Positions 30,520 through 34,533 of a DNA stretch of 64,000 bases are shown piece after piece (position 1 is the stretch's first letter; every line of letters starts with the position of its first letter). Both the position numbers and the translations under genes were made by a program. The stretch is from positions 62,001 through 126,000 of the IMG/VR virus record IMGVR_UViG_3300029258_002750; one strand, given 5' to 3'. Under the pieces are notes generated by a model. The model was not told the origin of the DNA. It worked only from the letters and a program-made list of their open reading frames with translations, and searched no databases.

Positions 30520-30714
30520 AAGCCCTCCCAGGATGGCGTTCTACCGAAACGGTCCGACAGATAGAATGGGATTCCGTATGAGGCTGCCGAGCTGGGTACG
30601 AAAGCTCATCTGCTCGATCCTGGGCCACGTTCCCCTCACGGTGAAGGAAAGCCCGGAGAAGGTGGTGATGTGCAAGCGGTGCTGGACCCGGCTCGACAGG
30701 AAGGGACGCAGGCG

Positions 30715-31665
30715 GTGAGCCTCTTCGATCGCGTGTTGGGCGAGGAAATCGGCGCGGCCGGATCCTGGGATCAGACCAACCCGGTCGGGGTCTCGAAGCA
30801 GTCCCGCAAGGTGATCGGGAACTTCCCGCTTCCGCTCAACAGGAGGCGGAAGAAGGGAGAGCGGCTCGACCCGAACCTGTACACCGAGCAGCAGCCTGCC
30901 CCGATCTCAGGCTGGGTTGTGCTGCGCTACCCAGCTGGCACGAAGCACGCGGGCAAGGCCGATGTCGTAATCGGCAAGGGCGGCGATCGGAAGCGGGCGA
31001 AGAAGATCGCCGACTCACTGCGGTGGATCTACGGCAAGCGGGTGAAGACAGAGGGCAGGTACGATCCCAGTCGGTGCACGAACACGGTCATGCGGGCATT
31101 CGGTGTCTGCGCCAACGACGCCATGAACACCGGGCATATTCTCAGCGGCTTGCGCCAGGCGGGGTGGAAGTATCAGCCGGTTCGACTACCGTGGGACAAG
31201 AAGACAAAACTGCGCGACTTCGTGAATTCGCATCCGAAGGGGCGCTACGTGATCGGTGTTCGTCGACACGCGATGGCCCTTATCGACGGGAAACTGATCG
31301 ACACGACGGAGAAAGGCCCGGACGGTAGGCACGTCAAGGACGTCTACGTCGTATGGCGAGCAGGCGAACCGACGCCCACGTTCGAGGACGAGCAGCCGTC
31401 GTTCAAGGTGCTGAGGAAGGGCCGCAAGCCGCTCGACCCCGAGGAACGGCAGCTCTGCTTCGATCGGAAGGCCGTCTGGCACAACCGGCTCAAGCGGAAC
31501 GAGAAGACTGGCGAGATCGAGCACCTGCCGACGCCAGCCGTCTGGAAGTCCGAAGTGGACGGCAAGACCTGGTACGTGACGAACACGCACCGGGCCTACA
31601 ACGTGACGCCGACGCTGAAGGCTACGATCAAACGGTTTCACGACTTCATCAGGGGCACGGCGTGA
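30715..31665 (+). CDS. MSLFDRVLGE protein with papain-like (C39-like) Cys-His-Asp domain
   Basis: SRCTNTVMRAF...KGRYVIGVRRHAMALIDGKLIDT; GTGA overlap start. Confidence 0.5.
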   Translation: MSLFDRVLGEEIGAAGSWDQTNPVGVSKQSRKVIGNFPLPLNRRRKKGERLDPNLYTEQQPAPISGWVVLRYPAGTKHAGKADVVIGKGGDRKRAKKIADSLRWIYGKRVKTEGRYDPSRCTNTVMRAFGVCANDAMNTGHILSGLRQAGWKYQPVRLPWDKKTKLRDFVNSHPKGRYVIGVRRHAMALIDGKLIDTTEKGPDGRHVKDVYVVWRAGEPTPTFEDEQPSFKVLRKGRKPLDPEERQLCFDRKAVWHNRLKRNEKTGEIEHLPTPAVWKSEVDGKTWYVTNTHRAYNVTPTLKATIKRFHDFIRGTA

Positions 31666-31724
31666 GCCTCTACGATCGGGTGCTCGCGGAGGAGGACCGG
31701 GGGGCTGTTCGCACGCTCTACGCG
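31662..31724 (+). pseudogene. Original 5' end (MSLYDRVLAEEDRGAVRTLY) of the HAD gene, split off by HNH insertion
   Basis: EDRG..VRTLY is duplicated at the start of the 32297 ORF on the other side of the HNH gene. Confidence 0.6.
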
Positions 31725-32216
31725 TCAGGGAACGTGCGTCCAGGTGCGCCCCTGCTTGATGTGGGCGATGGCGCTCTTGCTGACGCCGAGCGATGTGGCG
31801 ATGGCTTGCAGCGATTCTCCGGTCTTGAGGCGTTGTCGGATGCCCGGGATGTCGGCCTCGACGAGTTGCGCCTTCCTGTTCTTCGACCCTCTCCTGTCGT
31901 CAAACCGACCCTTTCGCGAGCAGTCTTCCATGTTCCTCTTCTGGGTGCCGAGGAACAGGTGGTCAGGATTCACGCAGGCCGGTGTGTCGCAGGAGTGGCA
32001 GACATTCATTCCCGGGGGGATGCTCCCTTTTTCCAGCAGGTAGGCTATCCGATGGGCACGTTGTTCTTTTCCCCATCGGATGTGCCCGTACCCGTCGTGG
32101 TTCACCGCCCCTGTCCAGAGCCAGCATCCGCTCTTCGTGCGACGAACTCTGCTCCAGAGTCGTGTCTCGATTGGGGTGTGGTGCGAGAAGCGCGGGGTAT
32201 GATGGTTGGTGGCCAT
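31725..32216 (-). mobile_element. Free-standing HNH homing endonuclease with C-terminal HTH
   Basis: CWLWTG..GYG..AHRIAY..VCHSCDTPACVNPDHL..GTQKRNMED; AAGGAGG RBS; inserted antisense within a + strand operon. Confidence 0.88.
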
Positions 32217-32247
32217 CGTGCCTCCTTCACAGGCTCGGCGGTCTGCG

Positions 32248-32273
32248 CAGCCCGGAGCCCTAACTCCGGGCTG
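32248..32273. promoter_or_regulatory. 10-bp stem hairpin in the HNH 5' leader
   Basis: cagcccggag-ccctaa-ctccgggctg; TACTAT -10-like element on minus strand near 32290-32295. Confidence 0.45.
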
Positions 32274-32296
32274 TCGCCTTCTGCAAGGATAGTAGC

Positions 32297-33037
32297 GTGA
32301 GACGGCGGGGGTTGAAGGTGCTCCTGTCGGAGGACAGGGGGAGTGACCTAAAGGTAAGAACACTATATATTTATGACTTCGACGACACGCTGGTCTACTC
32401 GCCGCCGGTCGAGCACATCCGTGACATCACGAAGGCGAGCAGCATCGTCGGCAAGCCGATCAAGGCCAAGCCTCAGGTGCGCGTGGCCTACCAGCGAGCG
32501 AAGCGGGATCACCTGGGCAAGGTCATCGTGATGACCGGCCGGATCAACACGCCCGAGCTGCGGAAGGCCGTGAAGAACGCGCTCGATCAGGCGGGCTACC
32601 CGGGCCACAAGCACGGCCGCGACCTCTTCCTCAAGGACCCGAAGGTGCGCCGCACGGCCGAGTGGAAGAAGAAGATGCTGCGCGGCCTCATGCGCCGGTT
32701 TCCGAACGTGACCTCGGTGCATATGTGGGACGACCGGGGCGAGCACGTCGAGCAGTTCCGCAAGCAGATCAAGGATCTCGGCCGCCAGGACCACGTCGTG
32801 CACGTCGCCGAGAGCCTCTACGACCGGATCATCGAGAGCTACCCGAACCGGCCTCGCGGACAAGCTCGCGACACGCCGGTACTATCCAAGGGGGAGAAAC
32901 CGCCGCCCGAGGCGCCAGCCGAAGAGCCTGAACAGCCGATGGACAAGCCGTTACCTGGGAACGTGAGTCCGAGAGCGTTCATGAGAGGAGCAGGTACAAG
33001 GGCTCAACGCATGAGAGGACCAAGGCCGCCTCGATGA
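32297..33037 (+). CDS. HAD-superfamily hydrolase (phage HAD, Swiss-Army-Knife-like)
   Basis: YDFDDTL, VMTGR, LFLK and MWDDR motifs; internal SLYDRIIE copy at 32813. Confidence 0.8.
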   Translation: MRRRGLKVLLSEDRGSDLKVRTLYIYDFDDTLVYSPPVEHIRDITKASSIVGKPIKAKPQVRVAYQRAKRDHLGKVIVMTGRINTPELRKAVKNALDQAGYPGHKHGRDLFLKDPKVRRTAEWKKKMLRGLMRRFPNVTSVHMWDDRGEHVEQFRKQIKDLGRQDHVVHVAESLYDRIIESYPNRPRGQARDTPVLSKGEKPPPEAPAEEPEQPMDKPLPGNVSPRAFMRGAGTRAQRMRGPRPPR

Positions 33038-33477
33038 CCGACCTCATGATCCTGCTCGCCGACACGGCGACGAAGACCGCCGCTGACCCCACGATCCCGA
33101 GCTGGGGCAAGTACGTTCTCGGCCCACTTGGCTGCCTGGTGCTGCTCCTGGTCTACGCCATCTACACGGAGAAGTACCGGATCCCCAAGTTCGAGGGGCT
33201 GCTGAAGACGAAGGACGACGCGCTGAAGGAGGCGCGGGACGAGCTGAGTACGCTCCGCGAGCAGAACTCGATCAAGCGGGAGGAGATCCGCGACAAGGCT
33301 GAGTCCAGGGAGGACGATCTGGAAGCGGAGATTCGGAAGCTCCAGGCCAAGATCGCGAAGGAGAAATCAGCCCGCGCGTGGTGGCAGGCGAAGGCGACTG
33401 GCGCCTTCAAGCGGCTCGACGAGGAGTTGAGCATCCCCGAGGACATCGACAAGACGCACTACGGGGGCGATGGCTAG
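33034..33477 (+). CDS. Membrane protein with coiled coil (lysis-type architecture possible)
   Basis: TM helix VLGPLGCLVLLLVYAIY followed by coiled coil. Confidence 0.5.
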   Translation: MTDLMILLADTATKTAADPTIPSWGKYVLGPLGCLVLLLVYAIYTEKYRIPKFEGLLKTKDDALKEARDELSTLREQNSIKREEIRDKAESREDDLEAEIRKLQAKIAKEKSARAWWQAKATGAFKRLDEELSIPEDIDKTHYGGDG

Positions 33478-34194: not shown

Positions 34195-34533
34195 TCACGC
34201 CTTCACCTGGCACTCGCAGCCCTTCGCCACGAGGATGCGACGCTGATCCGCGAGTGTGGTGATGCGCGACGGCGGTGGTACCTGCTCGTCCCAGTACGGC
34301 AAGCACGCGAGCGGTGATTTGTGATTCCACCCGCGCCGGACCATCTCCTCGGCCTGCTGCTGGTGGCGAACCGCCAGGTGTTGGAGACGCCCCTCCCAGC
34401 GCTTGACCTCTGGATGATGGCGGTAGCCTTGCCTGTCCTCGGTCAGGATCGTCCAGATCGCGTGCAGCTCGCGGTGCTCACCGAGCAGGTGCTTGCGGCA
34501 GAGAACGCGAACCGGCAGATCCCAGATCCTCAC
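34195..34533 (-). CDS. Pyrimidine-dimer DNA glycosylase (DenV/Pyr_excise-like family)
   Basis: MRIWD...LCRKHLLGEHRELH...GYRHHPEVKRW..L..RH...EMVRRG.NHKSPL. Confidence 0.8.
   Translation of the reverse strand: MRIWDLPVRVLCRKHLLGEHRELHAIWTILTEDRQGYRHHPEVKRWEGRLQHLAVRHQQQAEEMVRRGWNHKSPLACLPYWDEQVPPPSRITTLADQRRILVAKGCECQVKA

What the first reader, a model, noticed from the sequence alone, without database searches (positions are those of the whole stretch)
31662..32380. HNH endonuclease inserted into a gene start and supplying a recoded replacement N-terminus
Seen: left of the HNH lies MSLYDRVLAE-EDRGAVRTLY (31662-31721). Right of it the HAD ORF restarts as MRRRGLKVLLSE-DRGSDLKVRTLYIYDFDD. The EDRG..VRTLY peptide is duplicated but the DNA is recoded to AT-rich codons (cgcacgctctac versus agaacactatatatttat), and an L-x-E site is retained. 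The old start also reads stop-free across the antisense HNH to TGA at 32298-32300, overlapping the new GTG at 32297, which would preserve translational coupling. Established: free-standing homing endonucleases protect their own allele through divergence at the target site. Inference: the element rebuilt the 5' end of its target gene, swapping one targeting motif type for the other.
Basis: partly seen in the sequence, partly recalled or inferred. Interest (0 to 1): 0.65.

Follow-up and report, generated by a model that had tools for sequence, protein, structure and literature searches.

The report
Homing endonuclease cassette replacing a gene start
A mobile HNH endonuclease cassette sits inside the first codons of a jumbo-phage phosphatase gene and brings its own start codon plus a heavily recoded copy of the displaced coding segment, so the gene stays whole while the presumed cut site is destroyed; it resembles two recently described homing elements rather than a new principle.

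Summary
The window lies in a complete 275-kb, 65% GC virus genome.

In the window, a 652-bp cassette (31723-32374) interrupts that sequence. It consists of:
- an antisense HNH_3 gene (31725-32216), whose fold is closest to I-HmuI;
- a hairpin, a ribosome-binding site and a new GTG at 32297;
- 26 codons that re-encode the displaced segment.

The original 20 codons (31662-31721) remain upstream as a relic.

Between two phage lineages whose flanks are 77-90% identical, the stretch 31710-32382 differs at 1 of 673 bases. So the endonuclease and the new N-terminus move as one unit.

The recoded core (32354-32374) is the only 20-nt stretch with at least 16 A/T in the genome. It is also the longest run of rare codons, seven in a row. 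It differs from the empty site at 10 of 21 bases, yet changes only V>I and F>Y.

- a swap of "targeting motif types";
- selected translational coupling through the antisense frame, which is open by chance about 39% of the time;
- splicing.

The closest analogues are the T4-type MobA/gene 60 element and yeast WHO elements. I rate this a new variant of a known kind. Immunity to self-cleavage is inferred, not shown.

The parts
30715..31665 (+). Upstream gene. It starts with the recurrent MSLF/YDRVL motif, and its stop (31663-31665) overlaps the old GTG.
   Evidence: PHROG 3754, unknown function
31662..31722 (+). Relic of the original 5' end of the HAD gene: GTG plus 19 codons plus 1 base. It belongs to the host lineage, not to the cassette.
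   Evidence: It aligns with the start of the uninterrupted gene in L002. It has 5 differences between lineages A and B, all synonymous.
31723..32374 (.). Inserted cassette of 652 bp. It replaces 5 nt of the empty site.
   Evidence: Alignment A1 of occupied and empty alleles; near-identity over 31710-32382
31725..32216 (-). HNH_3 / His-Me finger endonuclease gene (163 aa plus stop) with a C-terminal helix-turn-helix
   Evidence: Pfam PF13392 at 8.4e-11. PHROG endonuclease families. Model pLDDT 93. Best PDB matches: I-HmuI 1u3e (Foldseek prob 0.99; VIA Z 7.4), I-PpoI (Z 6.9), and the Hin/resolvase DNA-binding domain for residues 108-160 (Z about 6).
32221..32228 (-). Ribosome-binding site GAAGGAGG of the HNH gene
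   Evidence: read directly from the sequence
32247..32274 (.). G+C-rich hairpin between the two divergent starts. It lies in the 5' leader of the HNH message, and no T-run follows it.
   Evidence: strand folding: z -2.7 on the minus strand, -1.95 on the plus strand. The terminator scan does not call it.
32285..32289 (+). AAGGA ribosome-binding site, 7 nt before the new GTG. In the MFE fold, its complement on the minus strand pairs with the HNH RBS.
   Evidence: MFE only; the pairing is absent from the centroid structure
32297..32374 (+). Element-encoded N-terminal replacement of 26 codons. Codons 1-7 are unique; codons 8-26 are homologous to the displaced segment.
32354..32374 (+). Recoded core (VRTLYIY), written as seven consecutive rare A/T-ending codons. 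It corresponds to the left part of the presumed target.
32375..33037 (+). Resident body of the HAD phosphatase gene, starting at the DxDxT motif. The whole ORF is 32297-33037.
   Evidence: Pfam HAD_SAK_1; PHROG 415, polynucleotide kinase. TLY[VI]FDFDDT is conserved even in homologues with about 34% identity over the short aligned N-terminal segment.

Best explanation
This is a free-standing HNH homing-endonuclease cassette that homes into the 5' end of a phage HAD-phosphatase gene, at the DNA encoding the first beta-strand and the catalytic DxDxT motif.

It is not removed by splicing. Instead it works by replacement. The cassette carries:
- the endonuclease gene on the opposite strand;
- a hairpin-containing leader;
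- on the host-gene strand, a ribosome-binding site, a GTG start and 26 codons that re-encode the displaced N-terminal segment.

The 21 bases corresponding to the left part of the empty-site sequence are changed at 10 positions while the peptide stays almost unchanged. An occupied genome therefore still makes a complete phosphatase but has no intact copy of the site. The original 20 codons stay behind as a relic.

Shown here:
- the insertion point;
- the empty allele;
- that the endonuclease and the new N-terminus move as one unit between diverged phages;
- that the recoding is statistically exceptional and protein-conserving.

Inferred, not shown:
- that the HNH cuts or nicks the empty site;
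- that the recoding confers immunity;
- that the new start is the one used.
For: - Empty versus occupied alleles align base for base up to 31722 and again from 32375.
- Cassette identity is 672/673 between lineages A and B, against 77-90% in the flanks. The same holds across all assembled copies.
- The identical HNH protein occurs on 16 contigs. In the 8 places shown it always sits antisense next to this HAD gene. The next nearest homologue is at most 54% identical and the two examined lie in other contexts.
- The catalytic domain is intact and the fold resembles I-HmuI/I-PpoI.
- The recoded core is the genome's single most A/T-rich spot and its longest rare-codon run. The changes are 6 synonymous plus V>I and F>Y, both seen in natural homologues.
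- No intact target remains in the genome.
- The cassette's overall GC is 58-66%, so the A/T patch is not a remnant of an A/T-rich donor.
- There are precedents for element-encoded replacement segments: MobA homR (bioRxiv 10.1101/2022.08.31.505936) and WHO elements (bioRxiv 10.64898/2026.08.13.744650).
Against: - There are no cleavage, expression or proteomic data, and no RNA runs hold the locus.
- Only two assembled occupied lineages and one empty lineage exist, so conservation of the cassette's internal features cannot be tested independently.
- For MobA, target polymorphisms alone did not stop nicking.
- The A/T patch lies about 140 nt upstream of the HNH start on the minus strand and contains TATAGT, so it could serve, or also serve, as a promoter element.
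- A second possible start (GTG 32318, preceded by a G-run) is not excluded.
- The new N-terminus lacks the MSLY motif, so the protein may have lost whatever that motif does.
Confidence: 0.75

Rival explanations
1. The new N-terminus is just the native 5' end of the HAD gene from the donor phage lineage. It was dragged along with the HNH gene by co-conversion or illegitimate recombination, and the element carries no special adaptation.
For: A 151-nt contig of run X12 shows a third lineage with the same junction. Its native left copy reads TLSEDRAADL before VRTLY, so it shares the 3-residue insert of the cassette's copy. This suggests the replacement segment descends from a natural allele. Both starts begin GTGAG.
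Against: The seven-codon rare run is unique in the genome. The rest of the cassette has ordinary GC. In X12, the native VRTLY codons lay on the G+C-rich reference with few differences. A plain donor allele would not be expected to carry this patch. The X12 evidence is a single contig at depth 2.
Confidence: 0.2
2. The A/T-rich patch exists mainly as a promoter or other regulatory element, for the antisense HNH gene or for the HAD gene. Protection from cleavage is incidental.
For: It is the only A/T-rich spot in a 65% GC genome. The minus strand reads TATAGT about 140 nt upstream of the HNH start. A plus-strand sigma-70-like match (9 of 12) ends at 32371.
Against: No minus-strand promoter passed the scan. 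No similar motif occurs elsewhere in the genome, so it is not a phage promoter class. A promoter alone would not require changes at nearly every wobble position across exactly the codons homologous to the empty site while the peptide is conserved.
Confidence: 0.15
3. One reading: the relic start is kept in use, ribosomes read through the antisense HNH and terminate at the GTGA, and this reinitiates translation at the new start as a selected feature.
For: The frame is open from 31662 to the TGA at 32298-32300, which overlaps the GTG at 32297. ATGA/GTGA overlaps are the usual gene junction here.
Against: This antisense frame is open by chance in about 39% of cases. The new start has its own AAGGA site. 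The cassette is identical in both lineages, so there is no independent conservation test. The arrangement would cost a 212-residue nonsense product.
Confidence: 0.1
4. The insert is a self-splicing intron or an intein, and the two halves are rejoined at the RNA or protein level.
For: HNH genes often ride in group I introns (established knowledge).
Against: No Rfam intron match in 31000-33200 at E<=1. The HNH is on the opposite strand. No Hint domain was found. Joining would duplicate the EDRG..VRTLY peptide. The downstream ORF has its own start and RBS.
Confidence: 0.02

Closest known systems
MobA / gene 60 mobile cassette of T4-like phages (Bonocora et al. 2011, cited from memory and not read here; analysed in bioRxiv 10.1101/2022.08.31.505936; review PMC2988022)
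   Same: - A free-standing HNH gene inserted in a functionally critical part of a phage gene.
- The element encodes a new N-terminal extension for the downstream ORF.
- That extension contains a region homologous to the displaced target segment (homR) with many polymorphisms.
- The element is near-identical within clades, and empty alleles exist.
   Different: - Here there is no 50-nt translational bypass; the ORF is continuous.
- The HNH is antisense.
- Nothing is deleted except 5 nt.
- The upstream piece is only a 20-codon relic rather than a functional half-protein.
- Target disruption is by dense, mostly synonymous recoding.
- Sequence relationship of this HNH to MobA was not tested.
WHO elements of Torulaspora yeasts (bioRxiv 10.64898/2026.08.13.744650)
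   Same: - Homing by replacement rather than splicing.
- The element is an endonuclease gene plus an alternative version of one end of the host gene, starting at the cleavage site.
- The old end is left beside it as a relic.
- The target region is under pressure to diversify at the DNA level.
   Different: - WHO elements use a LAGLIDADG/zinc-finger endonuclease in a eukaryotic nuclear gene and replace the 3' half.
- Here it is an HNH enzyme in a phage, replacing 26 codons at the 5' end.
- There is no cluster of successive elements.
mobE in nrdA of Aeromonas phage Aeh1 and other genes-in-pieces insertions (PMC2988022)
   Same: An HNH homing endonuclease inserted inside a conserved coding region. 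RNA hairpins near the endonuclease RBS are reported there too.
   Different: There the host gene is split into two polypeptides that reassemble. Here the downstream ORF is made complete by an element-borne copy.
I-HmuI (PDB 1u3e), intron-encoded HNH nicking endonuclease of phage SPO1
   Same: It is the best structural match for the catalytic part. The overall plan is the same: an N-terminal sheet, an HNH domain and a C-terminal helix-turn-helix.
   Different: Only 19-21% identity and Z 7.4, which is middling. There is no phmmer hit to it. I-HmuI is intron-encoded, whereas this gene is free-standing and antisense.

Membership tests
HNH_3 / His-Me finger homing endonucleases | beta-beta-alpha-metal catalytic motif (Pfam HNH_3 above the gathering score) | tested here: met
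   41.8 bits against a cut-off of 24.8. H74, N83 and H86 are invariant or nearly invariant in a 30-sequence alignment.
HNH_3 / His-Me finger homing endonucleases | Fold like a characterised homing HNH enzyme | tested here: inconclusive
   I-HmuI ranks top (Foldseek prob 0.99 but E 4.9e-3; VIA Z 7.4 over 85 residues). That is within the range the tool calls middling.
Homing genetic element (any class) | Occupied and empty alleles of the same site in related genomes | tested here: met
   L002 is empty; the window, L001 and others are occupied.
Homing genetic element (any class) | The element is much more similar between genomes than its flanks (recent lateral spread) | tested here: met
   1/673 differences inside against 77-90% identity outside.
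Homing genetic element (any class) | The endonuclease cleaves the empty allele and not its own | not testable with these tools
   This needs an enzyme assay. What can be shown is that no intact site is left in the genome.
Group I/II intron or intein | Ribozyme core, or Hint splicing domain in frame with the host protein | tested here: not met
   No Rfam match. There is no Hint domain, and the HNH is on the opposite strand.
MobA/gene 60-type cassette | Element-encoded N-terminal extension containing a homologue of the target segment | tested here: met
   32297-32374: codons 8-26 align with the displaced segment.
MobA/gene 60-type cassette | Translational bypass cassette, and the host gene split into two functional ORFs | tested here: not met
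   The ORF from 32297 is continuous, and the upstream piece is only 20 native codons.
WHO-type replacement homing element | Endonuclease gene plus an alternative end of the host gene, with the old end left as a relic | tested here: met
   Cassette 31723-32374 with the relic at 31662-31722.
WHO-type replacement homing element | LAGLIDADG plus zinc-finger WHO/HO-type endonuclease | tested here: not met
   The enzyme is HNH_3. The element works like a WHO element but is not a member.
T4-type capsid targeting sequence (old N-terminus) | A roughly 10-residue N-terminal propeptide with an aromatic residue at 4, hydrophobic residues at 7-8 and Glu at 10, plus a gp21-type protease in the genome | tested here: met
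   The pattern is Y4, V7, L8, E10. Seven genes start with this motif, each followed by [LI]-x-E. Peptidase_S77 lies at genome 193206-193460. The T4 rules are taken from PMC9026906. Actual packaging and cleavage are not testable here.

The most novel reading that the evidence does not exclude
Replacement homing may be a general solution found independently in phages. In this strategy, an endonuclease travels with a cleavage-immune, recoded 'rescue' copy of the gene segment it targets. It was recently defined in yeast as a third category beside introns and inteins. This cassette would be a natural equivalent of a home-and-rescue gene drive. As a side effect, it strips a virion-targeting propeptide from an enzyme, changing where that enzyme acts.
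Probability: 0.35. Interest if true: 0.7.

Novelty: new variant of a known kind. Interest (0 to 1): 0.55.

Why it matters
It gives a clean natural example, with both empty and occupied alleles in hand, of a homing endonuclease that keeps its host gene working by carrying a recoded replacement of the targeted codons. No intron, intein or translational bypass is involved.

Three things follow:
- It links the phage MobA/gene 60 case and the yeast WHO elements into one strategy.
- It offers a 33-bp sensitive site and a 10-change presumed resistant site that could be tested directly.
- It warns annotators that short relic starts and long antisense ORFs next to such cassettes are not genes.

It also marks the catalytic motif I of this HAD family as a homing target.

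Tried and rejected
- Intron or intein: an Rfam scan at E<=1 found nothing relevant.
- A/T-rich donor origin: three distant homologues come from 28-31% GC contigs (two more from about 41% GC) and share the TLY[VI]FDFDD peptide, but their DNA differs, and the cassette as a whole has 58-66% GC.
- A second 'motif type': patterns built from the new start matched nothing else in the genome.
- More alleles:
  - The phage collection gave only weak HNH hits.
  - IMG/VR gave one related contig plus distant homologues.
  - The metagenome scan added only copies of the two known lineages.
  - The genome-contig scan found none.
  - The X12 flank was absent from IMG/VR.
- Empty-site joints in contigs of four runs: none were seen. 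Contigs drop rare variants, so this proves nothing.
- RNA evidence: no RNA run holds the locus.
- Generality:
  - The genome's other HNH, a double domain after the capsid-like gene, has no relic duplicate beside it.
  - Two of the nearest HNH homologues sit in unrelated contexts.
- A PDB sequence search with the HNH was uninformative.
Full report
**Setting.** The window is bases 62001-126000 of a single 275,101-bp contig with 65% GC. The record is a virus genome with direct terminal repeats and is rated complete. A near-identical 275-kb sibling and several shorter contigs occur in sediment, seawater and other metagenomes.

**Observation.**
- The GTG at 31662 overlaps the stop of the upstream ORF. 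It opens 20 codons that end in VRTLY at 31721.
- On the minus strand, 31725-32216 encodes a 163-residue protein. It matches Pfam HNH_3 above the curated cut-off, with a weak helix-turn-helix match at its C-terminus. The RBS GAAGGAGG precedes it at 32221-32228.
- A strong hairpin lies at about 32247-32274.
- An AAGGA at 32285-32289 is followed by the GTG at 32297. This opens a 246-codon ORF that matches HAD_SAK_1 and a phage polynucleotide-kinase family.
- The frame of the old start stays open across the antisense HNH to the TGA at 32298-32300.

A protein word search with the HAD ORF returned four proteins. One of them, P0003, lies on a 5.6-kb contig (L002). It begins with the old-type start and runs without interruption through VRTLY-VF into DFDDT.

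The DNA alignment shows that the window and L002 are collinear up to 31722 and again from 32375. The 652 bases 31723-32374 are present only in the occupied alleles and replace five bases of the empty site. L002 has ordinary G+C-rich codons there and no trace of the cassette, so it is a naive site rather than a deletion product.

**The cassette moves as a unit.** All assembled occupied copies fall into two host lineages: A (the window type) and B (L001 and others). Identity between A and B by region:

| Region | Identity |
|---|---|
| Upstream gene | 77% |
| Relic (31662-31709) | 90% (5 differences, all synonymous) |
| HAD body | 82% |
| 31710-32382 | 672 of 673 |

The endonuclease gene, the leader and the new N-terminal codons therefore arrived recently and together in at least one lineage. 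Co-conversion of the flanks was at most 13 and 8 bases.

The identical HNH protein is on 16 contigs. In the 8 places shown it always sits antisense next to this HAD gene. The next nearest homologue is at most 54% identical, and the two I looked at lie in unrelated contexts.

**The recoding.** The 26 element-borne codons consist of seven unique codons followed by 19 codons homologous to old residues 7-22, with a three-codon insert.

The last seven codons (32354-32374) correspond to the 21 bases just left of the DFDD codons in the empty site. They differ from it at 10 of 21 positions. Six changes are synonymous, and the other four give V>I and F>Y, both seen in natural homologues.

Each of the seven codons is used for under 10% of its amino acid in this genome. 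This is the longest such run among about 69,000 codons; the next longest is five. The same stretch is the only 20-nt stretch with at least 16 A/T in the entire genome.

Random substitution at this density leaves two or fewer residue changes in about 5 of 10,000 trials. The rest of the cassette has 58-66% GC, so the patch is not a remnant of an A/T-rich donor. No intact copy of the empty-site sequence remains anywhere in the genome.

The peptide concerned is the hydrophobic strand that leads into the DxDxT nucleophile motif of HAD enzymes (established knowledge). It is conserved as TLY[VI]FDFDDT even in homologues with about 34% identity over the short aligned N-terminal segment. This fits the habit of homing endonucleases of targeting conserved catalytic sequence.

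**The enzyme.** A model built on 30 homologues has a mean pLDDT of 93. Its best solved-structure matches are I-HmuI and I-PpoI for residues 10-106, and the Hin/resolvase DNA-binding domain for residues 108-160. The scores are middling, so I treat this as consistent with, not proof of, an I-HmuI-like site-specific nuclease.

**Origin of the replacement segment.** One 151-nt contig from a wetland run carries the same left junction. It is preceded by a different native N-terminus that shares the three-residue insert of the cassette's copy. This suggests the replacement segment descends from a natural allele of another lineage and was then recoded. It is a single low-depth contig, and I could not extend it.

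**Claims that do not hold.**
- The stop-free antisense frame is expected in about 39% of cases, both by synonymous resampling of the HNH gene and empirically in 98 of 253 gene segments. The GTGA overlap is the genome's ordinary gene junction, and both starts begin GTGAG. Selected translational coupling is therefore not supported.
- The new MRRRGLK start matches nothing else in the genome, so there is no second 'motif type'.
- No intron family matches the region.

**The old N-terminus.**
- Seven genes in this genome start with M-S-L-[YF]-[DE]-R, each followed within 9-17 residues by [LI]-x-E.
- The genome encodes a T4-type prohead protease domain.
- In T4, the 10-residue capsid targeting sequence depends on residues 4 and 7 for targeting and on residues 8 and 10 for processing (PMC9026906). 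The old start has Y4, V7, L8 and E10.
- The cassette's start lacks the first part of the motif and keeps an L-x-E.

The insertion may therefore have detached the enzyme from virion targeting. This is inference only.

**Comparison with known systems.**
- In the MobA/gene 60 element of T4-like phages, an HNH gene inserts into the topoisomerase gene. It adds an element-encoded N-terminal extension that contains a region homologous to the displaced target segment. A bypass insert protects against nicking (bioRxiv 10.1101/2022.08.31.505936).
- Other phage endonuclease insertions split genes into pieces (PMC2988022).
- Yeast WHO elements consist of an endonuclease gene plus an alternative 3' half of FBA1. 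They leave the old half as a relic, with arms-race diversification of the site (bioRxiv 10.64898/2026.08.13.744650).

The present cassette works like these elements but differs in enzyme class or layout:
- the HNH is antisense;
- it replaces the 5' end;
- there is no bypass;
- the target is disrupted by dense, almost silent recoding.

**Verdict.** The anatomy and mobility are shown. Cleavage specificity, immunity and expression are inferred. This is a new variant of a known kind, of moderate interest.

Noticed in passing
window 17474, 30715, 31662, 45837, 46641; genome 150585 and 208921; internal copies at window 23169 and 32813 and genome 173222: At least seven genes start with M-S-L-[YF]-[DE]-R-[VL], each followed by [LI]-x-E within 9-17 residues. 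This resembles the T4 capsid targeting sequence. The genome has a Peptidase_S77 prohead protease domain at 193206-193460. In L002, three consecutive genes (HAD, NUDIX and a 139-aa protein) all start this way.
   Followed up: partly
window 32813-32839; L002:1955-3832: The HAD ORF ends in a fused SLYDRIIES motif. Compared with L002, the window lineage lacks about 1.9 kb (a C-terminal extension of the HAD gene plus a NUDIX gene). The junction lies inside the motif-coding DNA. Lineage B has a longer in-frame fusion to the next gene. The repeated motif DNA may act as a recombination site, and it leaves an internal copy of the motif on the HAD protein.
   Followed up: partly
run X12, laid on window 31704-31806: A third host lineage, from a wetland metagenome, has the same left junction but a different native N-terminus (TLSEDRAADL before VRTLY). 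That N-terminus resembles the cassette's own replacement segment. It rests on one 151-nt contig at depth 2.
   Followed up: partly
window 31666-31702: Contigs of much higher depth (96 in X5, 30 in X10) from other organisms match only this 37-nt motif-coding stretch, with 7 differences. The motif's DNA therefore recurs in other abundant phages of the same samples.
   Followed up: no
window 32200-32310, minus strand: In the minimum-energy fold of the HNH leader, the complement of the plus-strand AAGGA site pairs with the HNH ribosome-binding site next to the strong hairpin (z -2.7). This recalls RBS sequestration described for mobE and I-TevI. The pairing is absent from the centroid structure.
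   Followed up: partly
genome 196278-197429 (L004:2279-3430): A 383-aa protein with two HNH_3-like halves lies directly after a 477-aa capsid-like gene. No relic or duplicated gene end sits beside it.
   Followed up: partly
window 30670-31665 versus L001:2155-3369: The upstream motif-bearing gene differs by large internal insertions or deletions between lineages (331 against 404 codons as listed).
   Followed up: no
window 34195-34533, minus strand: A 112-aa ORF matching Pyr_excise (T4 endonuclease V-type pyrimidine-dimer glycosylase) in the precomputed annotation of the sibling contig.
   Followed up: no
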